Shown here in pieces: positions 22,922 to 63,206 of a stretch of DNA of 64,000 nucleotides. The notes below the pieces were generated by a model that saw only the letters and a list, made by a program, of their open reading frames with translations, did not search any database and was not told where the DNA came from. Position 1 is the first letter of the stretch. Every line of letters begins with the position of its first letter. The stretch covers positions 157,879 through 221,878 of IMG/VR virus record IMGVR_UViG_3300008954_003475. One strand, given 5' to 3'. The position numbers and the translations under genes were made by a program.

Positions 22922-22932
22922 ATTATATACTC

Positions 22933-26476: not shown

Positions 26477-27308
26477 CAGTCACTCCAGTGTTTAATACAT
26501 TTAAATCAGCTACTCTAAAACCAGATGCATTCTTGTGTCCACCGCCACCAAACTCAGCAGCAATCACAGATACATCATCACCATCTTCTTTCGACCTAAG
26601 CGAAAACCTATAACTCTCTCCATCATAATAATACGCAGCAGCAAAAGGCTCTCCGTCTGCTAACTCTGATGCCATTTCTGATTGAAAAAATGGAGCGTTA
26701 ACAATGGGAACTTCTTTGCCTAAAATATTTGTTCTATAAGAATTTAACAAAAGAGATCTAATCAAGTTTCTCTTGTACTGCAAGATTCCTTCTCCCATAT
26801 TCTTTACGCGTTTCCATCTAATAGATTCTGCTGCATCTAAATAACTATGTAGCATATCCCAATTATCAAATGTTTTCTCGAAAGAATCTACGGCAGACAG
26901 CACTTCTTCTGTAAATGGAAGTTCCCACTTCCACAAGTCTCTATCTTCAACATACTGAATAAGGAGAGGAACATTATCATCTGGAAACAAATAATCCCAA
27001 GCCAAATATGCTCCAGAATGATTCATATCAAAATAACAAAACTCTAAATCTCCCGAATGTTCTTGAGCCGACTTATGATGATCTAACACAACAAGGCTGC
27101 TAGCCTCTTGTTCCATTTCCAGCATTATAGCCCTATCATATGAAAAGTCAACAATAAATACATCACGATCTTTAACGCAAGGTCTTTCCTCGCCATGAGT
27201 AACAGGGATATATTCAGCACTCGCTCCAAACTTTCGCCTAAAAGCCCATGCTGCACCGAATCCATCGGGACAATTAGCATGGTATAAAACCATTATTTTA
27301 TCTGACAT
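26451..27308 (-). CDS. DHH/DHHA1-family phosphoesterase
   Basis: YHANCPDG, VDFS, LDHHKS, EDRDLW, FSLRS, GGGGHKNASGF. Confidence 0.9.
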   Translation of the reverse strand: MSDKIMVLYHANCPDGFGAAWAFRRKFGASAEYIPVTHGEERPCVKDRDVFIVDFSYDRAIMLEMEQEASSLVVLDHHKSAQEHSGDLEFCYFDMNHSGAYLAWDYLFPDDNVPLLIQYVEDRDLWKWELPFTEEVLSAVDSFEKTFDNWDMLHSYLDAAESIRWKRVKNMGEGILQYKRNLIRSLLLNSYRTNILGKEVPIVNAPFFQSEMASELADGEPFAAAYYYDGESYRFSLRSKEDGDDVSVIAAEFGGGGHKNASGFRVADLNVLNTGVTDESNKNES

Positions 27309-28324
27309 TAAATTACCTCTGGTGAATACGAAAACTTAACATACTCTACAAGGGGTGAGTTGTTTCGTATTGTTGTTTCAACAAAGCTTATCATTTCGTC
27401 TAAGCTTAAGAACCTAACCAATCTTCCACCATAACTGAGCTTAAAATGCCCTAATTCATTTATTATATCACACTTACTTATAACAAGGTTTGTTGTCCCT
27501 GTTATGTTAACTGCTCTAATTAGCATATCCAGATTGAGCCAATTAACCTTTCTTCTTCTTCCGGTCGTGACTCCAAACTCTTGACCTAAATCTGTAAGAG
27601 CCTTTAACACAGGATCTTCAAGCAATCTATTTGGGAACCTTGGGTCCTCTCCGCTCTTTGTATCATAGATCTTTGCAACGCCCCAAACCTTATTAATCTT
27701 CTGAGTTGGAAAGCCTATGCTGCAAGCTCCATAAGGCAATGTGATACTTGATGTTACATAAGGATAAAGTCCATTATCAATATCAAGCCAAACACCTTGG
27801 GCTCCTTCACATAACAGATTGCCATTTAATTCTTCATTCCAAACAAAGTCTTTGTCTAAAACATCAACGGCAAGAGTTCCAACCCTTGCTGCTTTATCTG
27901 CATAACAAGGGGCTATGCCTCGACCTGTTGTGCCAAGCTTTGCTGCCAAATGTTCTTTATCAAAAGCTATATGTTCCTCTGTAACAATATGGCAATTTGG
28001 AGCCACCTTTACTAATGACGTATCAAAACCACTTTTTGATAAATAGTCAATCTCTTTATAAAAAGATTCTGGATTCAAAACACATCCTGGGCCTATAAGG
28101 GACTGAACTCCATGAAAAACTCCAGATGGAATCAAGTGAGTTTTGTACTTCTCTCCTTCTACGAATACGGTGTGTCCAGCATTATTTCCACCGCCCCAAC
28201 GGGCAACTATATCATAATAATTAGAACCATCTTCATTCTTTGTAGAAGCTAACTGACTGGTGACTTTTCCTTTAGATTCATCCCCCCAAGCTAGTCCTAC
28301 AACTATATCTGCTATATCAATCAT
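27308..28324 (-). CDS. purA: Adenylosuccinate synthetase (short form)
   Basis: GLAWGDESKGK, GGGNNAGHT, HLIPSG, EGAQG..LDID.G.YPYVTSS, EFGVTTGRRR. Confidence 0.93.
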   Translation of the reverse strand: MIDIADIVVGLAWGDESKGKVTSQLASTKNEDGSNYYDIVARWGGGNNAGHTVFVEGEKYKTHLIPSGVFHGVQSLIGPGCVLNPESFYKEIDYLSKSGFDTSLVKVAPNCHIVTEEHIAFDKEHLAAKLGTTGRGIAPCYADKAARVGTLAVDVLDKDFVWNEELNGNLLCEGAQGVWLDIDNGLYPYVTSSITLPYGACSIGFPTQKINKVWGVAKIYDTKSGEDPRFPNRLLEDPVLKALTDLGQEFGVTTGRRRKVNWLNLDMLIRAVNITGTTNLVISKCDIINELGHFKLSYGGRLVRFLSLDEMISFVETTIRNNSPLVEYVKFSYSPEVI

Positions 28325-28904
28325 CGCTATCCTCTTCGCTTCCATTAAGAATGTTTATAACCTTCTTAATTTTACTGGGACGGCGAAGAAAAGTAATACC
28401 CTCTTTATGAGTAGAAACAGTTGCTGTGAATGTAATCATTTCACCTACATTAAAGCTATGTGCCTTAGATGTTTTGAAATACCACTTCCAACCTCTTTCG
28501 TCAACACAGATGATAGCTGGCATAGGATATTCGGTATTCATCTTTGCTTCTGCAATCTTATAAATACCAAGCGGTCCAAGATCTAATCTTGCTCCAACCT
28601 CAACATCAGGCTCGTCTAACATGGTTGCTTTCACAATTGAGTCAACCCATCTATTGAGAGATCCAATCCACTTCTCAGTTAGTCTATGAGGATTTTCTGT
28701 AACAACAGAAATGCTTGATTTAAGAAACTCATTGTTTGGACTTTCTTGTAGCTTTACAGCAAGAAGGGGAATAACCATAGGGTTTAATTGCTCTAGGTTT
28801 TCTTGACCTACTCTGGCGGTATCAACCCCGCTCTTCTTGCGTCTATTGGTGGCAGACTTTCTGGACTTCTTTTTCTTTCGTCCATCACTAAAGATATTTA
28901 TCAT
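28317..28904 (-). CDS. Hypothetical phage protein with possible C-terminal OB-fold
   Basis: EFLKS...LTEKW helical motif; VGEMITFTATVSTHKEGITFLRRP. Confidence 0.6.
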   Translation of the reverse strand: MINIFSDGRKKKKSRKSATNRRKKSGVDTARVGQENLEQLNPMVIPLLAVKLQESPNNEFLKSSISVVTENPHRLTEKWIGSLNRWVDSIVKATMLDEPDVEVGARLDLGPLGIYKIAEAKMNTEYPMPAIICVDERGWKWYFKTSKAHSFNVGEMITFTATVSTHKEGITFLRRPSKIKKVINILNGSEEDSDD

Positions 28905-28977
28905 AAGAAAACCCCGCACCTATCTGGTACAGGGTATTCGATGAAAAAACTATATTAGTTTATTTTATGTATGTTGC

Positions 28978-30486
28978 TTATAGCCTACGACTTGTACGAC
29001 TTGGCGGATATCCTGCTGCGGCTCTTTCTCGCGGAGTCATTCTTCTCCACTCTCTTTTTTGCTCCCTAGTCATATTATCCCAGTCTCTTCTTTGACCTCT
29101 TCTTGCCTCTTCTCTAAGATATCGCCGTTGTCTACGAGTTGTAGTACCTGAATCTCTAAGGTTGTTATTCACAGCAGATCTCTCTCTATCTGAAAAAGAA
29201 CTTCTCTGCTCCGGAATAAGCTGGCGTCTATAAGTAATAGGGATCCACAGCTTTGCGTCTACTGCTGCATTTCCAATCGGAGGTTTCGGATCTGTTGTAT
29301 TTTTCTTTTTATTGGTAAAGAAAAATACAGGAATCATTCTATTCTCTGCTGTATCATGAAATGCCCCTACGGAGCCATCCCTATCTCCGTTTGTCTTACC
29401 TTTAATCTCCGCTGCAGGATAGCCTCTAAAGCTACCACTCTGTCCCGCTTGTCCTGTCTGCCCTGCGCCACCAGACTCAGGCGTAAAGGTTGAAAGGGCA
29501 ATGCTGAAAGCACTTCCTGTATTGTCGTTATCATAAGCTGTTCTGACAGCAGCTTTGTTTGCGCCTCTTCCCAATACTGCAGTTGCAGTTGCTTTATCTA
29601 GAGGAAGATCTAATCCTGTTCCGTCAAATAATTTCGTTCTGGCCTCAAGAGGAAAGGACTCTGTTGCGGGGAACATGAGATAGCTTTCAAGCATCCTATC
29701 TCCATCTGTACCCTGTATCCCTCCGGTGTCCAGCCTTCCTGATAACATCCGTAAAGCTTCTTCTGCTGTTTCCGGAAGAGCACCCTTATCTGCTTTGGCC
29801 CAAGCCTGTTTAGATTTAGGTCCAAAATACCCATCGGGTACCAAATCTTTATCGCTATCATCTTTATACCCAAGCTCTTTAAGCTTCTCCTGAACAGCCT
29901 CTGCTGCATCTGATTTAAACAGCTTACCATCTTTCTTAAAAGGAGTAGCGGCCTGTGCAGCTTGTTGCTGACCGCCTTGCTGATCGCCTTGCTGATCGCC
30001 TTGCTGATCGCCTTGCTCCGAACTTCTACTGCTTAAGTGATGCCAGTCTCCAGGCCCGTCAGTCTTTTCATAAACAGCAGATGCCGCCGTGGAGCTCCAA
30101 CTCCCTTTAGGTAACTTTTTCCAGTCATAAAAGGAACCGCCACGGTTTCCTGCATTTAAACCCATGTAAATCCATCCTGACGGACCACCTGTACCTCCAT
30201 ATGCCTCTGCTTTGGCTTTGTCCCATTTCTCAACATCACCTCTGGTTAAACTATTTTCTGTATCAATGGTTAAAAGCTGCATCTTACCGGCTTGATTTCC
30301 CGTGCCTGCCCATACTGCATGTAGCTTTCCATCGGCCCCTTGCTTTACATGATAACTGTTGGGTTCTGGATCATCTTGTATACCCTTAGTAACAGCAGTC
30401 TTTACAAGCCCCTTTACAATCCTTGCCTGAGACTTGTAGCCTAACTTATAAAGCTCTTTAGCCAATGTGTTTAATTCATTATTCAT
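28978..30486 (-). CDS. Tag-family putative virion/ejection protein with peptidoglycan-binding-like domain and Arg-rich tail
   Basis: N-terminal ELNTLAKELYKLG...LVKTA; VQEKLKELGY..VPDGYFGPKSKQAW; GTGLDLPLD domain; Arg-rich C-terminus. Confidence 0.7.
   Translation of the reverse strand: MNNELNTLAKELYKLGYKSQARIVKGLVKTAVTKGIQDDPEPNSYHVKQGADGKLHAVWAGTGNQAGKMQLLTIDTENSLTRGDVEKWDKAKAEAYGGTGGPSGWIYMGLNAGNRGGSFYDWKKLPKGSWSSTAASAVYEKTDGPGDWHHLSSRSSEQGDQQGDQQGDQQGGQQQAAQAATPFKKDGKLFKSDAAEAVQEKLKELGYKDDSDKDLVPDGYFGPKSKQAWAKADKGALPETAEEALRMLSGRLDTGGIQGTDGDRMLESYLMFPATESFPLEARTKLFDGTGLDLPLDKATATAVLGRGANKAAVRTAYDNDNTGSAFSIALSTFTPESGGAGQTGQAGQSGSFRGYPAAEIKGKTNGDRDGSVGAFHDTAENRMIPVFFFTNKKKNTTDPKPPIGNAAVDAKLWIPITYRRQLIPEQRSSFSDRERSAVNNNLRDSGTTTRRQRRYLREEARRGQRRDWDNMTREQKREWRRMTPRERAAAGYPPSRTSRRL
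29974..30017. repeat. 12-bp tandem repeat encoding QQGD
   Basis: GCCTTGCTGATC x3 plus a partial copy. Confidence 0.85.
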
Positions 30487-30508: not shown

Positions 30509-32833
30509 TTAGCTTGGATTCTTTCCGCGCCACTGTTGTCTACGAGCATCTCTTGCGGCTCTATTGCGCTGTTGTATAGTTGTTTGCAGTGGCCCCGTTT
30601 GATTTTTCATAGCCTTTCTAACAGCTCGTCGTTCTTGATCTGTATGATAAGGAAGACCTTGTGCAAGCTGCTGTCTAAAGCGTACAGGCACCCACTTTCC
30701 TTCATAATTAAATAAAGGCTCATATCGTGTTGAGTTTGCCGGAAGATGTGTTGCCACAGTTCCCGCTCCTGCTCCGGAAACTCTCTCGGCAGGAATAACA
30801 GGAACATCGCCTGCTTGACCGCCGAGACCACCACCGAGTCCACCGCCGTCACCTCCGAGGTCTAACGGAGTACTAAATGCGGATAATGCAAAGTCAAGTC
30901 TTCCTTCTGCATTGTCTTTGTCATAAGCTTCTTCTACAGCCGTCTTGTTTGTTCCCTTGCCCAATACAGCAGCTGCGGTACCTGGATCCAAAGGAAGGTC
31001 CAAACCTGTTCCTTGAAACAATGCTGCTCTAGCCGGAAGATCTGCCTCTCCACTATATATAAGATACTTAGAAAGAGGCTTCTCTTCTCCGGTTTGTGCG
31101 GCTCCTCCAGCTTCGGCTGTATCGGAAGATCCACCGGCAGTTCTTTCTTCACTCTTACCTTCATCAAGTGCTTTTAAGGCCAAACCAGGAGATGATGGTC
31201 GGCCTCCTTTGTTTGCTTTGTTCCAAGCCTGTTGAGATTTTGTTCCCCAATCATTATCAATGTCTAACCTGTTTCCATCATCGTCTGTGAAACCAAGGTC
31301 ATTAAGCCTTCTTTGAACATCACCTATTGCAGAGTTACCCGCCGACCAACCGCTGGGAGATGATCCTGATCTTCTTGATGTTCCCGGGTCTGTTCCTGCT
31401 CCTGTTCCCGGGTCTGTTCCTGCTCCTGCAGAACCATCAGCAACTATTACCCAGCTACCGTCTTCCTTATCCGCAACACCAAAGCCAGGAACATCAGCCA
31501 TCATACTCTTGTATTGGCTGGCTGCTGACCAACCATCCATTTTTCTATATTCTGGATAAGCATGGTCGGTGTCTGGAAATCCATTTACCGGAATGCTATC
31601 AGATGAAGACGCGTTATTTACCTCATCGCTTACCCAGGTATCGGTTGCGCTATATCTCTTCGATGTCCACCTCGCATTACCTGTTAACTGTTTGTTAAAC
31701 ACAATACGGTGTAAATCGCCTCCGATGATTCGCCATCTAATGGGATTTGAACCCCATTCTTGATCAAGAGCATACTCACTTACTCCAGCGGCGACCCGTT
31801 CCTCCACAGTTGCTGCCTCAGAAACCGTCCCAGCAGCCGCATGTGCTGCGGCTTGTTCGGCAACTTGTCTGTCATTTTCTCTTACAAAGTCATCCCAATT
31901 TGTCTTGGCACGGTCGGCGGCTCGGGCAGCATCATCCTTGAAGGCACTTGAAGCTCCACTCAACATTATTGATTTAAACCAACTGCCGCTGGAATGGCCC
32001 GGCGTATAGGAGATCGCTGGCTCTTTCGTCGCCCCAGTGTCAAGCAGGCTCTCAGGGAGTCCTTCGCGGTAGTCGTCGGCGGCGAATGCGGCCCACACCG
32101 CTCTAGCAACCGCTGCTGCTTGCTCCTCATCACCCCCTGAATAAAAGTTCACGGTTGCCATTCTGTCGATTGCGTTAGTATATTCCTCAAGAGCTTTACC
32201 CAGCTTGTTCTGGCCTACGCTTCCATCCGAGGTGTAATTCCATGGAGCAGCAGTCTTTACAAGCCTCAAAGTCTCATTTGCTTGTTTTTCATACCCAGAC
32301 TTTCTCAAGGCTGTTGCAAGTTTGGTTAATTCTTTTTGTTCTGTATTCATAATGGTTCCTACCTTTGGTATCCTTCTTCTTTTTAATCTTCCAGTCTCCA
32401 AGAAACTAAAGTAATCTTCTGACTCAGTTTTAAACGGAATATTAATAGGTTTGGATCTTTCTCTTCTGTCAATATTAGATGGTGGTTTATCCTCATCAAT
32501 ATCAATAACCGATGGACCTCCAAAACCTGTGATAAATGATGCTTCAAAATCTTGCTGTTCGTAGCTAGACCTTGGTCTATAACCTTGCGCTCCGGGAGGA
32601 CTTCCGCCGGGAATGTCCGTTAAGCCCAAAGCTTGTTTGTGTATCTCTTGGAGTTTATTCTTTTTTGTCAACTTTTTGCCCTCGTCGGGTTCGTCGTCAG
32701 CATAATTATAAACTAACTCATGTGGATGAGAAGGAGTCCTTATAACATCCGGAGTCCTCTCTTTTATTACCGGTCCAGATTCATAATACGAAATTAAATC
32801 AAGGAGAGATAAACCCCTCTTCTTTTTTTTCAT
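30509..32833 (-). CDS. Tag-family putative virion/ejection protein with peptidoglycan-binding-like domain (possible internal start at 32350)
   Basis: Internal ELTKLATALRKSG...LVKTA; VQRRLNDLGF..IDNDWGTKSQQAW; GTGLDLPLD domain; basic tail. Confidence 0.7.
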   Translation of the reverse strand: MKKKKRGLSLLDLISYYESGPVIKERTPDVIRTPSHPHELVYNYADDEPDEGKKLTKKNKLQEIHKQALGLTDIPGGSPPGAQGYRPRSSYEQQDFEASFITGFGGPSVIDIDEDKPPSNIDRRERSKPINIPFKTESEDYFSFLETGRLKRRRIPKVGTIMNTEQKELTKLATALRKSGYEKQANETLRLVKTAAPWNYTSDGSVGQNKLGKALEEYTNAIDRMATVNFYSGGDEEQAAAVARAVWAAFAADDYREGLPESLLDTGATKEPAISYTPGHSSGSWFKSIMLSGASSAFKDDAARAADRAKTNWDDFVRENDRQVAEQAAAHAAAGTVSEAATVEERVAAGVSEYALDQEWGSNPIRWRIIGGDLHRIVFNKQLTGNARWTSKRYSATDTWVSDEVNNASSSDSIPVNGFPDTDHAYPEYRKMDGWSAASQYKSMMADVPGFGVADKEDGSWVIVADGSAGAGTDPGTGAGTDPGTSRRSGSSPSGWSAGNSAIGDVQRRLNDLGFTDDDGNRLDIDNDWGTKSQQAWNKANKGGRPSSPGLALKALDEGKSEERTAGGSSDTAEAGGAAQTGEEKPLSKYLIYSGEADLPARAALFQGTGLDLPLDPGTAAAVLGKGTNKTAVEEAYDKDNAEGRLDFALSAFSTPLDLGGDGGGLGGGLGGQAGDVPVIPAERVSGAGAGTVATHLPANSTRYEPLFNYEGKWVPVRFRQQLAQGLPYHTDQERRAVRKAMKNQTGPLQTTIQQRNRAARDARRQQWRGKNPS
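31380..31427. repeat. 24-bp direct repeat x2 encoding GAGTDPGT
   Basis: GTTCCCGGGTCTGTTCCTGCTCCT occurs twice in tandem. Confidence 0.85.
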
Positions 32834-32834
32834 A

Positions 32835-33962
32835 CTATCTCCTTACTAGGGGTGCTTCTCCGTTACTGAATATTCCAGAAAGAAGATCTGCCGCTTTCTC
32901 TATTCTGTCAAACTGTGCGTTAGCAACCGAATCAAAGGCTGCATCTTCATCAAAATCAATATCTTCATGCTGAACTCTAAAGGCGTCCTCTCTTGTTCGA
33001 CGCTCTCTGGCTTGTGCTATTCCACTATCTACATCTGTTAACAAAGCTAAAGCATCTTTTGGATTAGAAGGAAGAGCGCCCTTCCCTGCTTTAGCCCAAG
33101 CCTGCTTAGATCTTCTTCCAAAATCATTATCTGTTGCTAACTCTTTCTCTTCATTATCTGTATGCCCTAGCTCATTAAGTCTGACTTGAACATGCTCCCA
33201 TGTTGCGACCTCTGGCGTTTGAGCAGCACCTCCAGTCTCTCCTGTTCCAGACTGCGCTAAAGCAGTTCCTTGCGGAAGTTCTTTGCCCATTCTTTGAGCA
33301 TAATTCTGAATCTCACTCCAGTGACTAGCGAGATCTGGACTGGTTCTGATCCTCTCCTGATGCTCTTCGTCTCCCGATATATAAGAATCATACCATGACT
33401 TTGCTACCGCCCCAACATCAGAAGAACCTCCCGATGTTCCGCGACTTGTACCTGCCGACTCCATCCAATCAACAGTGTATTGAAGCATTCCTGCCATATC
33501 TCCTTCTTGTGGGTTTTCCTTTCCTGGGTAACCGGCCTTTGGTCCTAAAGATTTCCAATTTCGTGCTAAGTCGTCTCTTCCTATATGAGAAGTAAACGAC
33601 TCCCATCCTTTTTGCAAATCTCTACTCCATTTTGGATTCGACAAAGAAACCTCTACAAGATTAGCTTCATCAAACTGGGCCCATTTACCTTCTTTTGCTT
33701 TATCAAAAAAGAATTTCAAAATAGCTCTAAACACATTTACTCTATCACCTGTAGATAAATTTGCAGCGGTATCTGCCGCCGTCTTCAAGGCGCGAATAGC
33801 AGGCCTGAAGTTATCACCAACCTCTTCTTCATAATGCTCCCGATCCTCTTCTTCCGCCACTTCTTCCTGGGCAGTCTTTAAAAGATTGTCCAGCCTATCA
33901 GCTAGGTCTCTGTGACCAATGCTGTCTAAGTGATTTGCTAATTTAACTAATTCTTTTTGCAT
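32835..33962 (-). CDS. Tag-family protein with peptidoglycan-binding-like domain and conserved C-cap
   Basis: MQKELVKLANHLDSIGHRDLADRLDNLLKTA; VQVRLNELGH..TDNDFGRRSKQAW; DRIEKAADLLS. Confidence 0.75.
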   Translation of the reverse strand: MQKELVKLANHLDSIGHRDLADRLDNLLKTAQEEVAEEEDREHYEEEVGDNFRPAIRALKTAADTAANLSTGDRVNVFRAILKFFFDKAKEGKWAQFDEANLVEVSLSNPKWSRDLQKGWESFTSHIGRDDLARNWKSLGPKAGYPGKENPQEGDMAGMLQYTVDWMESAGTSRGTSGGSSDVGAVAKSWYDSYISGDEEHQERIRTSPDLASHWSEIQNYAQRMGKELPQGTALAQSGTGETGGAAQTPEVATWEHVQVRLNELGHTDNEEKELATDNDFGRRSKQAWAKAGKGALPSNPKDALALLTDVDSGIAQARERRTREDAFRVQHEDIDFDEDAAFDSVANAQFDRIEKAADLLSGIFSNGEAPLVRR

Positions 33963-33976
33963 TTTAATATCCTTAT

Positions 33977-34534
33977 TTATCTAGAAAAGGTGCCTGGAAC
34001 GTATGTTGTAAATTCACGCGACATTAACTCTGCTAACTTATCAATTCTTTCCTGTGCAGAATTGGCTGCAAAAACTTGATCAAAAGCTTCATCGCTATCG
34101 AGGACACCCTGCTCTTCCAATCGAGCTTCTCTGTCAGCATTGTAGGCCTCAAGAATCTCCTCTTTCGTACCAGTTTGTGCCGATGTTTCTTCAGGAACAG
34201 GTGGAGGCTCATCAGATGCTACCTGCCCCTCGGCATCCTCACCATATTGATTTACGTCTGGTTCGGCATAACCGCCGGGGTTTGGGTCTCGTTCAAGCGA
34301 AACTGAATCAAGATTCTTTTGTGCGATCCATGAATTTCTCAATCGTTGATTCCATGTCCCATCATCTTCACCCTCGTGCCGAGGATACTGCAGCTTTAAA
34401 TCCTCGATCTCTTCGGCAGTAGGAGCTACTGCACTACTTTGCGCACTCTTTAAAATTACATCCAACTTATCAGCCAAGTCTCCATGCCCGATGTTGTCTA
34501 AGTGATTTGCTAATTTAACTAATTCTTTTTTCAT
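33977..34534 (-). CDS. Tag-family acidic protein with conserved C-cap
   Basis: MKKELVKLANHLDNIGHGDLADKLDVILKSA; ERIDKLAELMSREFTT. Confidence 0.75.
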   Translation of the reverse strand: MKKELVKLANHLDNIGHGDLADKLDVILKSAQSSAVAPTAEEIEDLKLQYPRHEGEDDGTWNQRLRNSWIAQKNLDSVSLERDPNPGGYAEPDVNQYGEDAEGQVASDEPPPVPEETSAQTGTKEEILEAYNADREARLEEQGVLDSDEAFDQVFAANSAQERIDKLAELMSREFTTYVPGTFSR

Positions 34535-34548
34535 TTTAATTTCTCCAA

Positions 34549-35502
34549 TTATCTTCTGAAAACTCCCGTAACATTAGTTGTAAATTCACGAGACATTAAC
34601 TCTGCTAACTTATTGATTCTATCATGAACCGATTCTGAAGCTTCCTTCTCTACTTCAGGATCAATAGGGCTAAACTCTACATCTAATTCTTCATCAGAAG
34701 AGCCTTCAGAGTCCTGCCAGCCACCAGTGTCACCACCTTCTGATCTCAACCTCTCTAAAATTTTATCCTTCAACTCTACCATTCTCATTATAAAGCTAGG
34801 GCCTTTTGGTTCTTTTCCGGCATCGGCAAACTCTTTGGCCGCCGCTCCTCTCGCCTCATCTTGAGCCTGTCTATCAAGAGCTTTGTCATCCGCACTCTTT
34901 GTCAAACTTAAAGAATCACTTCCCTCTTTTTTATTCAAGATACCATCAAGCCTATCGGCCAAGTCTCTGTGACCTATGTTGTCCAAATGATTTGCTAATT
35001 TAACTAGCTCACTTTGCATTTTATAGCTTCCTTTAGATCCCAGTTTGATAACATTATCAATACGATTCTTTTTATTAGTAGTATTTTTTGAAGCTTCTAA
35101 CTGCAATCTTTGATTGATCATTCCCTCTGCCGCTCTCTCTGCCGCTTCTGCAACACCTTCGCCGCCTGGAAACTCTCCTTTCTCTGCATCAAAATCTTCT
35201 ATATGACCATATTCATGAACCAAAGTTTTTGCTATTTGAGCTACCAAATACTTTATTTCTTCATCAGTAGCGTTTGGAGGAAACTTGTTTATAACAAAGT
35301 GTATCTTATCTATCTTCCCATCATTGTTTACATCTTCGGAAGAAACATAAGCTGCGGCGTTTGGATCGCCGGAAGCAGGTGCCGGACCCCATTCGCACTT
35401 ATTGCTATTCAACATAGACATTATCTCGGGCTTTAAACCAAGAGTTTGAAGACCCTGTTTGACCTTCGGCCAATATGGAGGTTGCGCTGTTTTCTTCAAC
35501 AT
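34549..35502 (-). CDS. HExxH metallopeptidase-like domain fused to a tag-family module
   Basis: MLKKTA; LVHEYGH followed by EGVAEAAE; internal MQSELVKLANHLDNIGHRDLADRLD; C-cap DRINKLAELMSREFTT. Confidence 0.7.
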   Translation of the reverse strand: MLKKTAQPPYWPKVKQGLQTLGLKPEIMSMLNSNKCEWGPAPASGDPNAAAYVSSEDVNNDGKIDKIHFVINKFPPNATDEEIKYLVAQIAKTLVHEYGHIEDFDAEKGEFPGGEGVAEAAERAAEGMINQRLQLEASKNTTNKKNRIDNVIKLGSKGSYKMQSELVKLANHLDNIGHRDLADRLDGILNKKEGSDSLSLTKSADDKALDRQAQDEARGAAAKEFADAGKEPKGPSFIMRMVELKDKILERLRSEGGDTGGWQDSEGSSDEELDVEFSPIDPEVEKEASESVHDRINKLAELMSREFTTNVTGVFRR

Positions 35503-38500
35503 GTTTTATACTCTCCTAATAATAGATTATTATTCAAAGAAAATTTATCAAATAGGTTATATAATTCTTCTGATTCCTTTATCATATCTTGATCAACCAA
35601 AAGATTATACAATGGAACAATCTTTTGCATACCCAGCTTTGTTAATCCAAACTCTTCCATAATTTCAGCAAATCTAAGATTAACAATCTTTGCCCTGATA
35701 TCCTTTAACCTGCTCTTGCTTATACCACTTTGCCTAAGAGCTCTCTCGTTGCCGCCCAAATACCTTAGAAGGCCTGTTACTGTGTCTTGTTCTGGACCGC
35801 CATAAGGAAGCTCTGCTTCGTGAAAAACTTCTTTAACTAACCTTTCACCTTCAAGATACTTATCTCTGCTTAATTCAACGTCTCTTTTTTCTTGATCAAG
35901 CCTTCTGGCATCTCTTTCTCTCTCTCTTCTTGTGCTTATTATTGCACCATTTTGGGCTGGAGTCAAAGAATAATTGTATCCACCCTTCTTTTGTATCGGC
36001 ATTAAAGACTTAACTTTTTCAATACTTTTATTATCTGCTGGAATCCTAAATACATTTAATCCCAATATAGTATCGTCCTCTGCTTCTAACTTCTCCGGAA
36101 GCTCTTGATATATCCTTTTTCTTTTCTTTAAATTCTGTATAGAATTTCCACCTGACTTCAATAAATAAACATATTCCATACCCATTCTTTTTGCGGTCTT
36201 CATAGCGTTAACAATAATTAAATATGGATAATTTTGAGAAATAATCTCAAGATGTTTCTTGGAATCTTTCAGTTCAGGCTCTGAATATTTTTCTTTTAAG
36301 CCATGAAGACTTGTCGGTATTAGCCCAAGGTTATCCAGCCTATCCCTTATCTCTTTTGCTCTATCTCTATAAAGCTCCGAAGCTTTAGCATAAGCTTCGG
36401 CCTTCTCACTTTCGCTAGACTTATAACTTCCACTTATTTTCTCAAACTCTTTGGCCTTACTAGAATATTCTAAAAAGTCTACTGAATCCATTATCTCTAT
36501 AGTCTTTTTGGTAAAATCATCTGGCGAATCTTCCAACCTTGCCTCAAGCTCAGGAGTAAGGCTTTCATCAGCACGAAGCTCTTTCAGTTCCACATAAGCC
36601 CCGCCCTCTCCGTCTTTATAATTCAACTCAAACCTAGCACCTGTATTGCTTATGTAAGATATAGACCTATAAGCTTTCTTTGTTGGAGGCATCCTGTTAA
36701 AAACCCTGTCCAATACAACCGGATAATCTGATTGTATTTGTTCTATAAGAAGTTTCTCTTCAGGAAAAGAGGCAAGGGCCCAGGCCGAAGTAAACCCGGA
36801 ACTACCCAGGTTAGTATGTCCAACAAAATCTGCAGCACTAATGTTGTTTTTGTTTATGTCATACATTATCGGGGTCGGTGTTTCGTTGTCTTGCGTTAAC
36901 TCATATCTATCTACATCTGCATCTGTCAACTCCATTGGTCTTTGCTGACTTTGATAACCAGAATATTTTATCTTAGAATCAGGAAATGCTTCCATGTCTA
37001 TATCATTATGAGATCTGCTATGTATATCTTGTGCTTCATCCAGATGATCAATCTTTTCCAATCTTTTTAAAGCATACCTAAAAGGCTCGGGTATCAAAGC
37101 ATATTCTGATCCCCTGCTATACCTTGAGTAAAAATGATCAAAGTATGTTACTGAATCTTTGTTGCTTATAACAGCTTCCAAAACCTTTCTGTCTATCCTT
37201 CTTCTTAGATCACTAACTAGACGACCTGTAAATTTATAGCTGCTATCCAAAAAACACTTGTAATATTCTTCTATATTTTCTTCTATTTTCTTTGCAAATT
37301 CTATGGTCAACTCTGTTTTTAATTCTTCATCATCTATGTGATACAAGCTATCAGTTAATTTTTCACAGGCAGATTTGTCCATTCTGTTTAATATTAAATT
37401 GAAAACTTTTCTTTTTCCATCATCATCTAATTCTTGAGCAAAATATTTAAAAGACTCTGCCAACTTAGCTGGATCCATAGCTTCCAACACAGATCCCTCA
37501 TCTACACTTTCTCTAAAAATCTTATTCAGATCCAACTGTCTAGCTGTATCGTTCACTCTTCCTTCTGGATTGTTCATATGATTTATAAAATCATTAGGAC
37601 TTACTGTCAACAAGCTTCTATAGGCTACCTCTACATATTTATCGCGTATACTCTCTAGATCAACTGGCGCTCCAAACCAAGTTCTTATTCCAAGAAATCT
37701 GTTAGGCATCTTCTCTGCCATAAGAAGAAACACACTATCTGCTAAGTCTGGAAACTTTTCATTTAATTTATTATAAAAGAATGGATTAAAAATATTATTC
37801 TCTAAAAACTCAACATCATCTGATTCTTTTGCCATTTGCAACATATGATTAACAATTGCCTTCTCATGTTTTGGCATATTTTTATCTATTGCTAAATCAT
37901 ATACTCTAGTTAAGTTGCCAGAACTTATAGCCTCCTTCACTTCATCTATATATATCTTCGTACCCCTTTCGCCTTGTGGACTCTGACGACTTGAATTGAA
38001 TATAATTCTATCTAATCTATTTAATCGATCCTGTCCCAATATACTTTCAAAAGCATTTATAAGACCCTCTGACATTTCTTCTTTCTCATAGAGATAATGA
38101 TTATTGTCAAACAAATCAATAAACAAGTCTATTTTATCTCTTGTCGCATCAAAGACTGCTTGCTTTGAATTTAAATCAAAACGACTAATTCCAGATAAGG
38201 TGTTATTTAAATCATTAGACTCTCTCCAACCGGACTCTCCTCCGCTCATTCTATCTGCTACATTGTTTATCATAAAAATATATTTATTTACAAAATATGG
38301 CTCAAGTTCTCTTACGCTAAAGAGCCTATAGTTACTATGAGAAGGCCCTTCGTCTGTCTTTGCATCTAAAGCTTCTTTTACTTTTCCGTAAGAAAAAATT
38401 GTATTTAAAACAACCTGACCTTTCTGACCATGCCTGCCTGATGACAAATGCCTAATTGCTGTTGGGAACTTATCTCCATAAAGATCACTGTGCAATATTC

Positions 38501-38780
38501 CAGAAAATAGATCTTCTGCGTATCCTATTCTTTTTTGTTCTTGCATGTTTGCGTTTAATATCCAAAAGATTATAGCACCAACATGCCTTATCCCATGAAT
38601 ATCTCCATCCAAAAGCTCTTGAAAGGCTGCCTCTAAATCTTCACCTTCGCCCTGCTCTTCCTCTGATTCAAAATCAGAGAAGCTGCTTGATAACATATTT
38701 TGAACAAATTTTGCTTCCAAAGTTTCATTCGCTACTTTGAATAAAGTAAAAATATTATTTAATCTAGAATTTTTAATCAT
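35496..38780 (-). CDS. Large (1094 aa) putative internal virion protein
   Basis: LFKVA near the N-terminus, LLIEQIQSD motif, divergent tag-like C-terminus; heads the tag-family cluster. Confidence 0.65.
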   Translation of the reverse strand: MIKNSRLNNIFTLFKVANETLEAKFVQNMLSSSFSDFESEEEQGEGEDLEAAFQELLDGDIHGIRHVGAIIFWILNANMQEQKRIGYAEDLFSGILHSDLYGDKFPTAIRHLSSGRHGQKGQVVLNTIFSYGKVKEALDAKTDEGPSHSNYRLFSVRELEPYFVNKYIFMINNVADRMSGGESGWRESNDLNNTLSGISRFDLNSKQAVFDATRDKIDLFIDLFDNNHYLYEKEEMSEGLINAFESILGQDRLNRLDRIIFNSSRQSPQGERGTKIYIDEVKEAISSGNLTRVYDLAIDKNMPKHEKAIVNHMLQMAKESDDVEFLENNIFNPFFYNKLNEKFPDLADSVFLLMAEKMPNRFLGIRTWFGAPVDLESIRDKYVEVAYRSLLTVSPNDFINHMNNPEGRVNDTARQLDLNKIFRESVDEGSVLEAMDPAKLAESFKYFAQELDDDGKRKVFNLILNRMDKSACEKLTDSLYHIDDEELKTELTIEFAKKIEENIEEYYKCFLDSSYKFTGRLVSDLRRRIDRKVLEAVISNKDSVTYFDHFYSRYSRGSEYALIPEPFRYALKRLEKIDHLDEAQDIHSRSHNDIDMEAFPDSKIKYSGYQSQQRPMELTDADVDRYELTQDNETPTPIMYDINKNNISAADFVGHTNLGSSGFTSAWALASFPEEKLLIEQIQSDYPVVLDRVFNRMPPTKKAYRSISYISNTGARFELNYKDGEGGAYVELKELRADESLTPELEARLEDSPDDFTKKTIEIMDSVDFLEYSSKAKEFEKISGSYKSSESEKAEAYAKASELYRDRAKEIRDRLDNLGLIPTSLHGLKEKYSEPELKDSKKHLEIISQNYPYLIIVNAMKTAKRMGMEYVYLLKSGGNSIQNLKKRKRIYQELPEKLEAEDDTILGLNVFRIPADNKSIEKVKSLMPIQKKGGYNYSLTPAQNGAIISTRRERERDARRLDQEKRDVELSRDKYLEGERLVKEVFHEAELPYGGPEQDTVTGLLRYLGGNERALRQSGISKSRLKDIRAKIVNLRFAEIMEEFGLTKLGMQKIVPLYNLLVDQDMIKESEELYNLFDKFSLNNNLLLGEYKTC

Positions 38781-38784
38781 ACCT

Positions 38785-39195
38785 TTAACACTTAGGGACG
38801 AACAATCTTGGCTTATTAGGCTTTATATATCTTGTTGATGTTGTAATGATATCAATTCCATCACACCTTATTATAGAAAAGAAATAGTTAAATGCCGATC
38901 TTGAGCTAACCTTTCTAACCTCTATCCATTCTCTTCTCTTAGAAGTAATGTCCGATGACTTTGCAAGAAACATATGAAGAGCAGAGCCGGCACTTGCCGC
39001 AAAGTCTTGTGCTATTATATCATTCAACTGCCTGTTGCTCAAGTCATATAAAACATCTCTATGAGAAAATCGCTCATTGAAATACTTTCTATACTTAATC
39101 CTCGCTGTCGTAGAAACACGAATGGGAAGACTTGTTCTAGGATCGGTCAATGAAGACTCTTCAATCTCTGCTTTCTTGTGTATATCTTTTGACAT
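38785..39195 (-). CDS. Basic hypothetical protein
   Basis: 136-aa ORF, first gene after the terminator at 39236-39267. Confidence 0.65.
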   Translation of the reverse strand: MSKDIHKKAEIEESSLTDPRTSLPIRVSTTARIKYRKYFNERFSHRDVLYDLSNRQLNDIIAQDFAASAGSALHMFLAKSSDITSKRREWIEVRKVSSRSAFNYFFSIIRCDGIDIITTSTRYIKPNKPRLFVPKC

Positions 39196-39235
39196 TATAC
39201 GCCCTTAAAATTCATAATTAATATAAATAATTAGC

Positions 39236-39267
39236 ATAAAAAAAGCCCGACCAAAATGGTCGGGCTT
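39236..39267 (-). terminator. Rho-independent terminator
   Basis: AAGCCCGACCA-loop-TGGTCGGGCTT stem followed by T7 on the minus strand. Confidence 0.88.
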
Positions 39268-39295
39268 AATATAATCATCTTTATAAGATATAAAA

Positions 39296-39565
39296 TTATT
39301 CCATATTTATATGGTATGCCAAATATTTATAGAATCCTTCTTCATCTTCTACCTTAATCTTTTTAGGCATCCTCTCATAGCCATGCCTGATTAAAGAAAC
39401 ATTTTGTTCCCTATAATGAGCTTCGACTCTATCTTTCAGAACGGCCATTATAGCTCCATCAAAACTTAGCTTCAAAGAATCTTCAACCCCTGGGTGTTCA
39501 TCCAGCTTAAATCCTCTTAACTTATTTTTATGAAGTGGCTCGATAAGCCAAATGTATTTATCCAT
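39296..39565 (-). CDS. Hypothetical protein
   Basis: ORF; start set at MDKY after GAGGAG RBS. Confidence 0.6.
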   Translation of the reverse strand: MDKYIWLIEPLHKNKLRGFKLDEHPGVEDSLKLSFDGAIMAVLKDRVEAHYREQNVSLIRHGYERMPKKIKVEDEEGFYKYLAYHINME

Positions 39566-40436
39566 TACTAAGCTCCTCATTGGCTTGGTTTCTTTCCGCC
39601 TCAATGCGTTCAAGCCTTCTTTCTAACTTCTGCTTTGCATAGTAAAAAGGAGTACCCATAACAGAGGCGAGAAGATACTCTGGCAAACTATCAACAAGCT
39701 CGCTAACTACACGTTCATATTTTGAATCAGTAAATTGAAGCAGTAGTTCATCAGAGTTTGAATAAAGCTCTGTATTCTCAACTAAAGCTTTAAGTCCAGA
39801 AACAGAAGAATCTTCACTTCCATCGCTCCGAATTTTTCTAGCTGTTTTCTTTGTAAGAAAACCCTGTTCAACATAAAGCTTATACATCAAACCTCTAACC
39901 GGATACGACGGCTTTCCTTCTTTGGAGAAGAAGATTTGATTCTCTACATGCTCTTTCAAAGAAGCCGAATCAGACTTTGCAAATCCTTTAGAGATTTCTA
40001 CATATGATGGCCTTAAGTAATTATTAGAGTTTTGATAAACAGAAACAGCATTAAACAACGGCTTCCAATCATACCCCTCTATCATATTTGCAGCAGAAAT
40101 CATATAGTCTGCCTGACCATACCATACCTCTCGACTCTTACCATCTTCCTTCAACGAAGCTGTTAAGCCTTCAATCTTCTCTTTCCAAAAAGGTATTGAA
40201 TACAAATCTATCTCTGCCCTTTTAGCAGTAGAAAAAACCTCATTTAATGAGTCACAATTATCAATTGCATCATAGCGATTAGACAAAACATCAGGATGAT
40301 AAATTATCATTCTTCGCATCTTTTCAATTTCATCATCCACCTTATACCCTCTGTAGGTTCTTGCAAAAAGATGTTCAATACCCCTATGTATTAGCTTCTC
40401 CTTTGTCAAACCTATTTCAACAGAATTTTTAGACAT
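39558..40436 (-). CDS. Helical-repeat hypothetical protein (paralog family A)
   Basis: FTDSKYERVVSELVDSLPEYLLASVM aligns with 24822-25736. Confidence 0.7.
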   Translation of the reverse strand: MSKNSVEIGLTKEKLIHRGIEHLFARTYRGYKVDDEIEKMRRMIIYHPDVLSNRYDAIDNCDSLNEVFSTAKRAEIDLYSIPFWKEKIEGLTASLKEDGKSREVWYGQADYMISAANMIEGYDWKPLFNAVSVYQNSNNYLRPSYVEISKGFAKSDSASLKEHVENQIFFSKEGKPSYPVRGLMYKLYVEQGFLTKKTARKIRSDGSEDSSVSGLKALVENTELYSNSDELLLQFTDSKYERVVSELVDSLPEYLLASVMGTPFYYAKQKLERRLERIEAERNQANEELSNG

Positions 40437-40438
40437 AA

Positions 40439-40705
40439 TCACTCCCCATTTACCCAAGCCTTGAATTCATCAAGGTGGGCATTAAGAACTGCTATTCTAA
40501 CTGCATCGTCAAGATTATCCCAAGTTGGAGCAATATCTTTTAATGACATTTCCAAAAAAGAACTCTTCAACTCCTTATGATCTGTATCATAACTTCTGTT
40601 GCAGGTATTTACACCAATGGCAATAAGAAAGTTTAGCACTTCCTCCTTCGACATTACTTCTACTTCCTCTACAATTTCTAGAGGCACACTTTCTACGGCT
40701 GACAT
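40439..40705 (-). CDS. Hypothetical protein
   Basis: 88-aa ORF with GGAG RBS. Confidence 0.65.
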   Translation of the reverse strand: MSAVESVPLEIVEEVEVMSKEEVLNFLIAIGVNTCNRSYDTDHKELKSSFLEMSLKDIAPTWDNLDDAVRIAVLNAHLDEFKAWVNGE

Positions 40706-40775
40706 AAAACTCTCCTAATAAGACGAACCTAGCCTTACTGTTAAGTAATTGGTGGTAAAAGAAAATTAAAAACTT

Positions 40776-42380: not shown

Positions 42381-42390
42381 CTTGCCTCCT

Positions 42391-42663: not shown

Positions 42664-42761
42664 AATATCTCCTTATTATATTTTACCCACAAATGGTTGC
42701 TTCCACAAGTGGTTCCTTTACGAAGGGATTATTGTACTCAAGGCTCAAAAAAACTCAACAA

Positions 42762-43427: not shown

Positions 43428-43444
43428 ATTCTACTTCACTAATC

Positions 43445-45480: not shown

Positions 45481-45481
45481 G

Positions 45482-62494: not shown

Positions 62495-62716
62495 TTATCT
62501 TGCAGAATTTATATCATATTTGTTATACAAATCATTTTTACCAATAATGCTTCCACTGTAATCTGGGTTTACTACCTTTCTGTTGTTCCAATAAATTGTT
62601 TCAACAACATACTTTTCTATATCTGGATAATAAGTCAAAACACGGTGTCCGTAATCTTTATCGTCTAAAGCACGAACTTCTTTCCCAGCCAAACTATCTG
62701 AATCAAACATTATCAC
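62495..62716 (-). CDS. Hypothetical protein
   Basis: 73-aa ORF. Confidence 0.55.
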   Translation of the reverse strand: MIMFDSDSLAGKEVRALDDKDYGHRVLTYYPDIEKYVVETIYWNNRKVVNPDYSGSIIGKNDLYNKYDINSAR

Positions 62717-63206
62717 ACCCTTCTATGATAAGTAAATCAATTTCATCGGCAGCTTTGATATGTCCCATCGAATCTAAATAATTAGAAAGTTTTATAAGGC
62801 TGTGCTTAACCTTTGAAGTAATATCGTTAGGCCGGGAAGAACTATCTTTATTACCCAGAAGAATTGCATGATCTTCTTTTATTCTGGTCAATATTTCGCA
62901 AGGAACGCCAGCCTCTTCAAACCACTTTACTTCACGCTTGCTATGTGCAAGCATTTCTTTTTCCGGAAACCCTTTTTCTTCAAGTTCTTTATGCTCTTTT
63001 AAAAGTTTCTTTTTAATTTTATCGGAAAGAAAAGGAACCGCCTCTTCTTTTTCAAATTCAAAATGACATTCGGGGCAACATGAAGTTTCCTCTTTCGCCT
63101 GTTTTTTTTCGCTGCATGATTCACATGCGGCTTTATTTAAAGAATCAACACTCCAGGTGTATGGTTCGTTCAAATAGGTTGCAAGATTTGTAATTCTATC
63201 AGTCAT
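62703..63206 (-). CDS. Cys/His-containing protein with C-terminal tag-family motif
   Basis: CESC, CCPECH, EH..HSKRE..EDH; SLIKLSNYLDSMGHIKAADEIDLL. Confidence 0.7.
   Translation of the reverse strand: MTDRITNLATYLNEPYTWSVDSLNKAACESCSEKKQAKEETSCCPECHFEFEKEEAVPFLSDKIKKKLLKEHKELEEKGFPEKEMLAHSKREVKWFEEAGVPCEILTRIKEDHAILLGNKDSSSRPNDITSKVKHSLIKLSNYLDSMGHIKAADEIDLLIIEGCDNV

What the first reader, a model, noticed from the sequence alone, without database searches (positions are those of the whole stretch)
32835..35502. Cassette architecture: conserved N-cap and C-cap around swapped interiors, with near-identical DNA at the caps
Seen: C-caps DRIEKAADLLSGIF, ERIDKLAELMSREFTTYVPGTFSR and DRINKLAELMSREFTTNVTGVFRR end three consecutive genes whose middles differ in length and content. 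The N-cap DNA is identical over 36 bp (33923-33958 vs 34495-34530) and the C-cap DNA matches at 35 of 36 bp (34006-34041 vs 34578-34613). The C-cap (RIxKLAxL) resembles the first half of the N-tag, and 62703-63206 begins MTDRITNLATYL. Inference: homogenised caps act as recombination handles or are strongly selected docking helices, allowing cargo exchange within an array.
Basis: partly seen in the sequence, partly recalled or inferred. Interest (0 to 1): 0.6.

Follow-up and report, generated by a model that had tools for sequence, protein, structure and literature searches.

The report
Swappable cargo genes with conserved caps
An uncultured marine jumbo phage carries a row of genes whose products keep a conserved 30-residue helical tag and a conserved tail around interchangeable middles, and closely related phages carry different combinations of those middles, with the switch points in the conserved ends.

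Summary
33923-33958 equals 34495-34530 at 36/36 bases, and 34006-34041 matches 34578-34613 at 35/36. The repeated unit is a junction: C-cap, 14-nt spacer, then the next gene's N-cap.

The window lies in a 222-kb marine virus record. One minus-strand operon holds five tagged genes.

The N-cap is an unannotated ~30-residue helix-turn-helix tag found in 405 metagenomic protein clusters. It is mostly N-terminal, but also internal, C-terminal or repeated. I found it in no cultured phage, Pfam or PHROGs. The C-cap was found only in tag-bearing proteins (59 of 163).

Three metagenome contigs that are 93-96% identical in the flanks carry other cargo alleles, and the four haplotypes combine alleles differently. 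Cargo identity is 18-37% or undetectable. Similarity switches off and on at the caps.

Synonymous sites vary between lineages, so the caps are held at protein level. The resulting DNA homology then serves as crossover sites.

What the caps bind is not shown. My best guess (about 0.35) is loading into the capsid, as with T4 internal proteins. The co-fold of N-cap with C-cap gave no answer.

This is a new variant of a known kind.

The parts
39243..39267 (-). Terminator-like stem-loop (11 pairs, T run) that closes the upstream unit, so the operon holding the array starts just after it.
38785..39195 (-). First gene of the operon (136 aa, basic, pI 9.9). It is conserved in all six related lineages at this position. 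No tag.
35496..38780 (-). 1094-aa acidic protein of unknown function, overlapping the g5 start by 7 nt. Present in L013 and L010, absent from L006, L012 and L009.
34549..35502 (-). g5 (317 aa): zincin-like HExxH domain (residues 1 to about 145), internal tag (residues 162-193 = 34924-35019), acidic cargo (34642-34923), C-cap (34552-34641).
34439..34644 (-). Junction module J1: g5 C-cap + 14-nt spacer with a Shine-Dalgarno-like site + g4 N-cap. It is 96.6% identical to L013 while both neighbouring interiors are unalignable.
33977..34534 (-). g4 (185 aa): N-terminal tag (34439-34534), very acidic cargo (pI 4.1), C-cap (33980-34069).
33895..34088 (-). Junction module J2: g4 C-cap + spacer + g3 N-cap. 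It is 88.7% identical to L013. It holds the 36-nt stretch identical to J1.
32835..33962 (-). g3 (375 aa): N-terminal tag (33867-33962), helical cargo with a PG_binding_1-like stretch, C-cap (32838-32927).
32440..32949 (-). Junction module J3: g3 C-cap + conserved N-terminal part of g2. It is 92.9% identical to L013 (up to that contig's end) and 92% identical to L026.
30509..32833 (-). g2 (774 aa): conserved 165-residue N-part, divergent internal tag (about 32240-32338), variable interior with a PG_binding-like stretch, arginine-rich tail (last 60 aa, pI 12).
28978..30486 (-). g1 (502 aa): divergent N-terminal tag (30391-30486), sub-threshold PG_binding_1 hit, arginine-rich tail (last 90 aa, pI 11.8).
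28911..28935 (-). Terminator-like stem-loop (10 pairs) 43 nt after the g1 stop. This is the end of the operon.
62703..63206 (-). Separate 167-aa cysteine-rich protein with a bona fide tag at its C-terminus (residues 136-160, about 62727-62801).

Best explanation
Shown:
- g3, g4 and g5 (and, more distantly, g1 and g2) are modular proteins of an uncultured marine jumbo phage.
- Each has a ~30-residue helix-turn-helix tag (consensus M-x-K-E-L-V-K-L-A-N-H-L-D-x-I-G-H-R-D-L-A-D-R-L-D-x-I-L-K).
- In g3-g5 there is also a ~25-30-residue C-terminal amphipathic helix ending in F...R-R.
- Between these lies a mostly acidic middle, modelled with low confidence over much of its length, that differs from relative to relative.
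- Both caps are held by selection on the protein.
- Because the genes are packed head to tail, C-cap + 14-nt spacer + next N-cap forms a ~200-nt island of DNA homology between otherwise unalignable cargo. These islands are where similarity between related phage genomes switches.

Inferred from the mosaic:
- Homologous recombination in the islands replaces one cargo at a time while keeping frame, order and caps.

Inferred by analogy only:
- The caps dock every family member onto one common partner.
- The most likely partner is the assembling capsid or its core, so that varied cargo is packaged and delivered with the DNA, as the capsid-targeting sequence does for T4 internal proteins.

My confidence is about 0.85 for the cassette and recombination part, about 0.8 that the caps are protein-level functional modules, and about 0.35 for capsid loading specifically.
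For: Architecture:
- Searches give the genes and caps.
- The tag profile finds 405 clusters at E<=1e-3 among 1.84 billion representatives. Most have the tag at residue 1. Others have it at about 160-200 behind the HExxH domain, at the C-terminus, or 2-6 times.
- The C-cap occurs in 59 of 163 tag proteins. All 6 ORFs with a C-cap in 20 IMG/VR loci also carry the tag.

Protein-level constraint:
- Between unrelated genomes the N-caps are 67% identical in DNA, and only 47% of same-residue codons are identical.
- There are no Rfam hits.

Mosaic:
- Window vs L013 is 94.8% identical over 9,037 nt up to 34952, inside the g5 tag. After that, only J1 (96.6%), J2 (88.7%) and J3 (92.9%) align.
- Four haplotypes carry g5/g4/g3 cargo alleles a/a/a (window), b/b/b (L013), b/a/c (L026) and b/a'/b (L051).
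- Cargo identity between different alleles is 18-37%. Tags are 81-100% identical, C-caps 80-100%, and the g5 N-domain 98-100%.
- P0003 vs P0004 and P0007 vs P0008 share caps with no alignable interior.
- Contigs of an independent run (X7) cover the caps and g4 but not the g3 or g5 interiors, and they break away at 32939/32968, 34515 and 34968-35004.
- Array content differs in all six lineages.
- Tag genes are often tandem elsewhere, up to five in a row.

Hints for a virion role:
- A tag protein sits two genes upstream of the large terminase and portal.
- g1 and g2 have arginine-rich tails with pI about 12, and 119 of 159 tag proteins have pI below 5.5.
- There are peptidoglycan-binding-like stretches in g1-g3.
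- T4 internal proteins are described as a highly diverse set sharing only a capsid-targeting sequence (PMC3012670).
Against: - No partner of either cap was identified. The N-cap + C-cap co-fold gave no verdict.
- The array lies between a GroEL gene and a PurZ-like gene, not in the head module.
- The tag works at N-terminal, internal and C-terminal positions, unlike the strictly N-terminal, cleaved T4 targeting sequence.
- No protease site was recognised.
- All relatives are metagenome assemblies, so the phase of cassettes along a contig could in principle be chimeric.
- Copies 99.6-100% identical to the window from several samples show no array variation.
- The haplotypes show three of the four allele combinations per gene pair, not all four.
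Confidence: 0.55

Rival explanations
1. The caps are docking or oligomerisation modules, but for an intracellular job rather than for the virion. Tag-bearing proteins would assemble on a phage or host hub during infection, for example a host-takeover or anti-defence complex. The cassette turnover would reflect an arms race with host factors.
For: - The array is in an operon next to GroEL and metabolic genes, not in the head module.
- The tag is position-independent and sometimes repeated within one protein, as expected of a general interaction domain.
- Cargo is acidic, as many DNA-mimic anti-restriction proteins are (from general knowledge).
- One member carries a zincin-like peptidase domain.
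Against: - No hub was identified.
- The arginine-rich tails and peptidoglycan-binding-like stretches fit particle and entry roles better.
- One tag gene lies beside the terminase and portal genes.
Confidence: 0.25
2. The mosaic is an artefact. Metagenome assemblers switched between co-occurring strains at the conserved caps, so the reassorted haplotypes are chimeras.
For: - All relatives are short-read assemblies.
- The caps are exactly the kind of shared sequence where assembly graphs branch.
- Loose ends at internal places in runs X4 and X6 (33038/33072, 33707) show graph branching in this region.
Against: - The window haplotype is recovered identically in at least nine contigs from several samples and two data sources.
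- L026 and L051 come from other samples and studies.
- Even if the phase were wrong, distinct deeply divergent cargo alleles between the same caps exist. That already requires replacement bounded by the caps.
Confidence: 0.07
3. The genes are host-recognition (tail fibre or receptor-binding) cassettes. The conserved ends would attach them to the tail and the variable middles would read host surfaces.
For: Hypervariable islands in marine phage populations are usually host-recognition genes (general knowledge). Peptidoglycan-binding-like stretches hint at cell-envelope contact.
Against: - Interiors are acidic, helical or modelled with low confidence, with no beta-rich fibre or knob domains.
- There are no tail-fibre hits in PHROGs or Pfam.
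- In fibres the distal end varies, whereas here the C-terminus is conserved.
- No tail genes are nearby.
Confidence: 0.07
4. There is no recombination. The middles are disordered linkers under relaxed constraint that simply diverged in place much faster than the structured caps.
For: Most of the g5 interior and parts of the g3 interior are modelled at pLDDT below 50, and cargo composition is biased. Some allele pairs are still detectably homologous (g3: 39% over 182 aa; g4: 35%).
Against: - Flanks differ by only 4-7% in DNA while interiors are unalignable, so in-place divergence would need synonymous saturation inside and near-zero change outside.
- Allele sharing is incongruent between neighbouring genes: g5 groups L013 with L026, and g4 groups the window with L026.
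- Some cap-sharing pairs have unrelated interiors of different length.
Confidence: 0.04
5. The junction is conserved as a nucleic-acid element (translational coupling signal, RNA structure or processing site), not for the protein.
For: The spacer keeps a Shine-Dalgarno-like GGAG/AGGA and ...ATTAAAATG before every tag, even before internal tags.
Against: Outside close relatives, synonymous positions in the caps vary freely (47% identical codons) while residues stay. There is no Rfam match. The tag is equally conserved when internal or C-terminal.
Confidence: 0.02

Closest known systems
T4-type internal proteins (IPI, IPII, IPIII and their polymorphic locus) with the capsid-targeting sequence
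   Same: A set of highly diverse, mostly non-essential proteins shares only a short conserved terminal sequence. The genes are clustered and differ between close relatives. The conserved part makes cargo interchangeable (PMC3012670).
   Different: - The T4 signal is about 10 N-terminal residues removed by the prohead protease. Here the tag is a 30-residue helical hairpin that also works internally and C-terminally.
- Here a second, C-terminal cap exists.
- There is no sequence similarity.
- Packaging is unproven here.
PeSL (promoter-early stem-loop) mediated modular shuffling in T4-like hyperplastic regions
   Same: Short conserved sequences flanking variable genes act as crossover sites that insert, delete or replace single genes between closely related phages (PMC2839356, PMC4122927).
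   Different: PeSLs are intergenic regulatory cassettes (promoter plus terminator). Here the handles are coding sequence kept by selection on the protein, and the spacer is only 14 nt with no terminator, so exchanges are in-frame domain swaps rather than whole-gene swaps.
Cargo-loading peptides and scaffold docking helices of HK97-fold shells (P22 scaffolding protein coat-binding helix-turn-helix; encapsulin targeting peptides)
   Same: A small terminal helical element is enough to direct an arbitrary cargo into the shell. The tag superposes on the P22 domain 2gp8 (Z 4.8, 40 of 40 residues).
   Different: That Z is no higher than for dozens of unrelated helical hairpins in the same list. The tag's invariant residues are acidic or polar (N, H, D), not the basic face of the P22 domain (general knowledge). 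No shell contact was tested.
Paralogous families of head, inner-body and ejection proteins in giant phages (phiKZ-like phages, SPN3US)
   Same: Jumbo phages with many tandem paralogues of head-internal proteins processed by the prohead protease (PMC5694885, PMC7411985, listed; details from general knowledge).
   Different: No homology was detected. Those families are conserved along their length rather than cap-only, and cassette reassortment has not been described for them as far as I know.
Gene-conversion cassette systems of bacteria (pilE/pilS, polymorphic toxin orphan modules)
   Same: Conserved flanks bracket variable segments, and homologous recombination swaps the middle (general knowledge).
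   Different: Those use silent donor copies within one genome. Here every copy is an expressed gene and the donors are other phage genomes.

Membership tests
T4 internal-protein / capsid-targeting-sequence system | About 10-residue N-terminal targeting sequence followed by a prohead-protease cleavage site | tested here: not met
   The tag is 30-32 residues, forms a helical hairpin in the model, and occurs N-terminally, internally, C-terminally and repeated. PHROGs and Pfam give no hit.
T4 internal-protein / capsid-targeting-sequence system | Diverse cargo sharing only the targeting element, in a locus that is polymorphic among close relatives | tested here: met
   Only 15 of 325 pairs have interior similarity, against 69% mean tag identity. 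Four haplotypes differ in cargo within 93-96% identical flanks.
T4 internal-protein / capsid-targeting-sequence system | Proteins are packaged in the head and injected | not testable with these tools
   This needs virion proteomics or tagged-cargo packaging assays.
PeSL modular shuffling | Intergenic sigma-70 promoter plus stem-loop terminator flanking each shuffled gene | tested here: not met
   Junction spacers are 14 nt. Terminator-like sites lie only at the operon ends (39267-39243, 28935-28911). Promoter-like hits are at the chance level, 31 against 25.5 +/- 4.9.
P22-type scaffolding coat-binding helix-turn-helix | Fold match that stands out from other helical hairpins | tested here: inconclusive
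   2gp8 scores Z 4.8, rmsd 2.9, 40 residues. Many unrelated hairpins score 4.4-5.3 in the same list.
Zincin metallopeptidase (g5 N-domain only) | HExxH with a downstream glutamate ligand, conserved in homologues | tested here: met
   H96, E97, H100, D103, E115, E119 and E122 are invariant in 12 sequences.
Zincin metallopeptidase (g5 N-domain only) | Zincin fold | tested here: inconclusive
   VIA gives Z 6.1 (lugdulysin) and 5.7 (3e11). The Foldseek best hit is 3e11, E 0.076. All top hits are zincins, but the scores are below the tools' confidence marks.
PG_binding_1 (stretch shared by g1, g2, g3) | Pfam gathering score | tested here: not met
   g1 scores 20.8 bits against a cut-off of 23 (E 4.5e-4). 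g2 and g3 have no hit. Atlas feature hits to PG_binding clusters are at 0.80, which is lead level only.
Diversity-generating retroelement target | Variable region differing from a template repeat by adenine-specific substitutions, with a nearby reverse transcriptase | tested here: not met
   Alleles differ in length and are unalignable. No second copy of any interior exists in the region. No reverse transcriptase appeared among the operon proteins scanned. The whole genome was not scanned for one.

The most novel reading that the evidence does not exclude
The tag, with the C-cap as an accessory, is a general address label of a large clade of marine jumbo phages. It would load any attached polypeptide into the capsid or another phage-built compartment. 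The tandem arrays would then be exchangeable payload racks, whose cargo is reassorted across the phage population by in-frame recombination at the labels. That would be a protein-delivery platform evolving by domain-level shuffling in an arms race with host defences.
Probability: 0.3. Interest if true: 0.8.

Novelty: new variant of a known kind. Interest (0 to 1): 0.62.

Why it matters
- It gives a first handle on at least 405 clusters of dark-matter proteins from marine jumbo phages. They share one small module, and so probably one partner.
- It is a clear natural case where selection on protein docking elements creates the DNA homology that then drives in-frame cassette exchange between genomes. 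This is a mechanism for metagenomic islands that is not based on tail fibres or intergenic elements.
- If the tag is a packaging or recruitment label, it is directly usable for loading foreign cargo. It would also point to a large reservoir of injected or recruited effectors, possibly counter-defence proteins.

Tried and rejected
- Complex prediction of the N-cap (A1) with the C-cap (A4) scored 0.02 against a mark of 0.32. That is no verdict, and I do not count it for or against binding.
- Megablast of the region and tblastn of g3 and of a tag against 50,697 cultured-phage records found nothing. The one weak tag hit (Sphingomonas phage PAU gp25, E=4) lies in a thymidylate synthase and is chance.
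- Single-protein pattern scans of IMG/VR with g3 and with the 1094-aa protein found no relatives. The profile scan did.
- The word search restricted to the g4 C-cap returned only 5 proteins, too few for a co-occurrence test. I used a local C-cap HMM instead.
- A Pfam census of 138 tag proteins found no recurrent cargo domain, only coiled-coil noise in one protein.
- The AF2 model of g3 (mean pLDDT 60) had no match at E<=0.001 in PDB or BFVD, so the cargo fold is unknown.
- Context look-ups for two distant tag proteins (P0024, P0145) gave short uninformative contigs.
- A full-text search for the motif strings found nothing relevant.
- The X7 joint 32964 to 34982 rests on a 20-letter side and is not counted.
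Only genetic code 11 was used. Read laying was given 5,001 letters.
Full report
**1. What is there**

The window is the last 64 kb of a 221,878-bp IMG/VR virus record. CheckV puts the record at 66% complete, so this is a jumbo phage. It encodes a GroEL, an SbcC-like nuclease and a short PurZ-like adenylosuccinate synthetase. Outside the window it encodes a second GroEL, the large terminase, the portal and a 1150-aa protein with a head-protease domain.

The finding lies in a minus-strand operon bracketed by two strong terminator-like hairpins at 39267-39243 and 28935-28911. The gene order is:
- a 136-aa gene
- a 1094-aa gene
- g5 (34549-35502)
- g4 (33977-34534)
- g3 (32835-33962)
- g2 (30509-32833)
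- g1 (28978-30486)

**2.

Both DNA identities are exact as stated, 36/36 and 35/36.

A 36-nt identical run is not explained by the shared residues. In 59 N-cap pairs from unrelated genomes the longest run is 19 nt.

The tag also occurs elsewhere:
- inside g5, at residues 162-193 behind an HExxH domain
- in divergent form inside g2 and at the start of g1
- in three more proteins of the genome: one two genes upstream of the terminase, one carrying it twice, and 62703-63206 carrying it at its C-terminus

**3. The caps are protein modules of a large, unannotated family**

A profile of 20 tags (A1) finds 405 clusters at E<=1e-3 among 1.84 billion representative proteins. In most of the 150 best hits listed, the tag starts at residue 1. 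In others it sits at about 160-200 behind the HExxH domain, at the very C-terminus, or in two to six copies.

Residues L5, L8, N10, H11, L12, D13, G16, D19, L20, D22 and D25 are invariant in A1. Pfam and PHROGs do not know the tag. Searches of 50,697 cultured-phage records found nothing. A Pfam census of 138 members finds no recurrent cargo domain.

The C-cap has the consensus D-R-I-x-K-L-A-x-L-M-S-G-E-F-x(4)-P-G-x-F-R-R, with F30 invariant. It is present in 59 of 163 tag proteins. In 20 IMG/VR loci, every ORF with a C-cap also has the tag (6 of 6), while 34 of 40 tag ORFs lack it. The C-cap is therefore an accessory of the tag, not an independent module.

Between unrelated genomes the N-cap DNA is 67% identical, and only 47% of same-residue codons are identical. 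There is no Rfam match. Conservation is therefore on the protein, not on a DNA or RNA element.

**4. Relatives: the decisive comparison**

Six syntenic lineages were fetched. Conserved genes (GroEL, three small genes and the 136-148-aa gene on one side; a ~190-aa gene and the PurZ-like gene on the other) flank arrays of different content:

| Lineage | Array (protein lengths in aa) |
|---|---|
| window | 1094, 317, 185, 375, 774, 502 |
| L013 | 1092, 321, 175, 285, then contig end |
| L010 | 1134, 384, 393, 241-251, 764 |
| L006 | 287, 376, 703, 523 |
| L012 | 307, 1119 |
| L009 | 188, 376, 613 |

L013 is 94.8% identical to the window over 9,037 nt, up to position 34952 inside the g5 tag. Beyond that, only three islands align:
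- 34439-34644 at 96.6%
- 33895-34088 at 88.7%
- 32440-32949 at 92.9%

These islands are exactly the junction modules.

Two more contigs from other samples (L026, L051) give four haplotypes for g5/g4/g3 cargo:

| Haplotype | g5 | g4 | g3 |
|---|---|---|---|
| window | a | a | a |
| L013 | b | b | b |
| L026 | b | a | c |
| L051 | b | a' | b |

Cargo identity between different alleles is 18-37%. The tags are 81-100% identical, the C-caps 80-100%, and the g5 N-domain 98-100%.

P0003 vs P0004 and P0007 vs P0008 share caps with no alignable interior.

Those contigs break away at 32939/32968, 34515 and 34968-35004.

Each allele switch in a 4-7% divergent background is a replacement bounded by caps, and neighbouring genes group the genomes differently. 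That is recombination at the caps, unless the assemblies are chimeric. I rate the chimera rival at 0.07, because the window haplotype recurs in at least nine contigs from several samples.

Those near-identical copies show no array change. Turnover is therefore seen between strains about 5% apart, not within the sampled population.

**5. Homogenisation**

C-caps group by position, not by genome. The g5 C-cap is 100% identical to that of its L013 counterpart, and for g4 and g3 the figure is 87%.

N-caps show a mild within-genome excess of identity, 0.74-0.82 against a median of 0.67. The 36-nt g3/g4 patch is absent from the g3 orthologue in L013.

One small conversion tract or a recent duplication would explain this. 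It is not strong concerted evolution.

**6. What the proteins may do**

- The AF2 model of g5 has a moderately confident N-domain (pLDDT 70-87), tag hairpin (about 72) and C-cap helix (about 70), with a low-confidence interior.
- The N-domain has invariant HExxH...E residues, and its best fold matches are all zincins at modest scores.
- In L009 the same domain ends with the tag and a stop codon, and the next gene starts with a tag. So g5 is a fused form.
- Tag proteins are mostly acidic: median pI is 4.9, and 119 of 159 have pI below 5.5. g1 and g2 end in arginine-rich tails with pI about 12.
- g1 has a sub-threshold PG_binding_1 hit, and the stretch it covers is repeated in the g2 and g3 DNA. 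Atlas features for g3 point the same way at lead level only.
- The g3 cargo fold has no match.

These traits fit particle-internal or ejected proteins, which are nucleic-acid-binding, scaffold-like or envelope-contacting. They do not prove it. The closest described system is the T4 internal-protein set, which shares only a capsid-targeting sequence (PMC3012670). PeSL shuffling (PMC2839356) is the closest recombination mechanism. Membership in either fails on defining features (see the table).

**7. Verdict**

The architecture and its population-level reassortment are real and well supported. The caps are selected protein modules. Their partner and the biological role are inferred.

This is a new variant of a known kind: coding, two-ended handles and a new tag family.

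Noticed in passing
window 35017-35040 (before the g5 tag) and about 32336-32350 (before the g2 tag); L006, L010, L012 equivalents: Every internal tag of the g5 type is preceded by Met (GTG/Val in one homologue), with a Shine-Dalgarno-like GGAG/GGAA 9-12 nt upstream at the same spacing as in stand-alone tag genes (...GGAG-N-ATTAAAATG). This holds across lineages only about 40% identical. It suggests an internal start giving a short tag-first isoform beside the long fusion.
   Followed up: partly
L009:9416-9982 and L009:10001-11131: In the 232-kb relative, the HExxH domain is a separate 188-aa protein that ends with a tag and a stop. The next gene begins with a tag. g5 of the window is the fused version, so the tag marks a fusion/fission point.
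   Followed up: partly
window 27308-28345: A short (345 aa) adenylosuccinate-synthetase homologue whose best PHROG is the PurZ-type enzyme (phrog_1211, 3.2e-66). It is conserved with a DHHA1-like neighbour in all relatives. The phage may replace adenine by 2-aminoadenine. Not tested.
   Followed up: no
window 40776-42380 and G000 144082-145737: There are two GroEL-type chaperonin genes in one phage genome. The first lies just upstream of the array operon in all six lineages.
   Followed up: no
window 29965-30024: A 12-nt tandem repeat (4 copies) inside g1 encodes (QQGD)n. A similar short GTDP repeat lies in g2 (about 31366-31413). These low-complexity tracts could vary in length.
   Followed up: no
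window 29517-29650 vs 30907-31040; 29739-29901 vs 33035-33197 vs 31214-31320: g1, g2 and g3 share two further conserved blocks at 64-72% DNA identity. One is a PG_binding_1-like stretch, and the other (g1 and g2 only) is a motif LFxGTGLDLPLD...AVLGxGxNK. So parts of the cargo are also shared modules.
   Followed up: partly
G000 119771-123223 (outside the window): A 1150-aa protein has a head-maturation-protease domain near its N-terminus, followed by a long acidic region with DLGGGD(A/V)P repeats. It looks like a protease fused to a scaffold-like region and is a candidate partner for the caps.
   Followed up: no
L044 (IMGVR_UViG_3300010389_000001, 36013-48105): A second site in the 232-kb relative holds five consecutive genes that each start with the tag and lack the C-cap. 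Tandem tag arrays are therefore not confined to the locus studied.
   Followed up: partly
window 62703-63206: A tag-bearing protein with CxxC...CCPEC cysteine clusters (possibly zinc-binding) and the tag at its extreme C-terminus. Its N-terminal DRITNLATYL looks like a C-cap helix by eye, but the C-cap HMM does not hit it.
   Followed up: partly
window 20177-24033: An IMPDH-like dehydrogenase, a MoxR/AAA_5-type ATPase and a DUF2201-type partner lie downstream of the PurZ block. They are conserved in the relatives.
   Followed up: no
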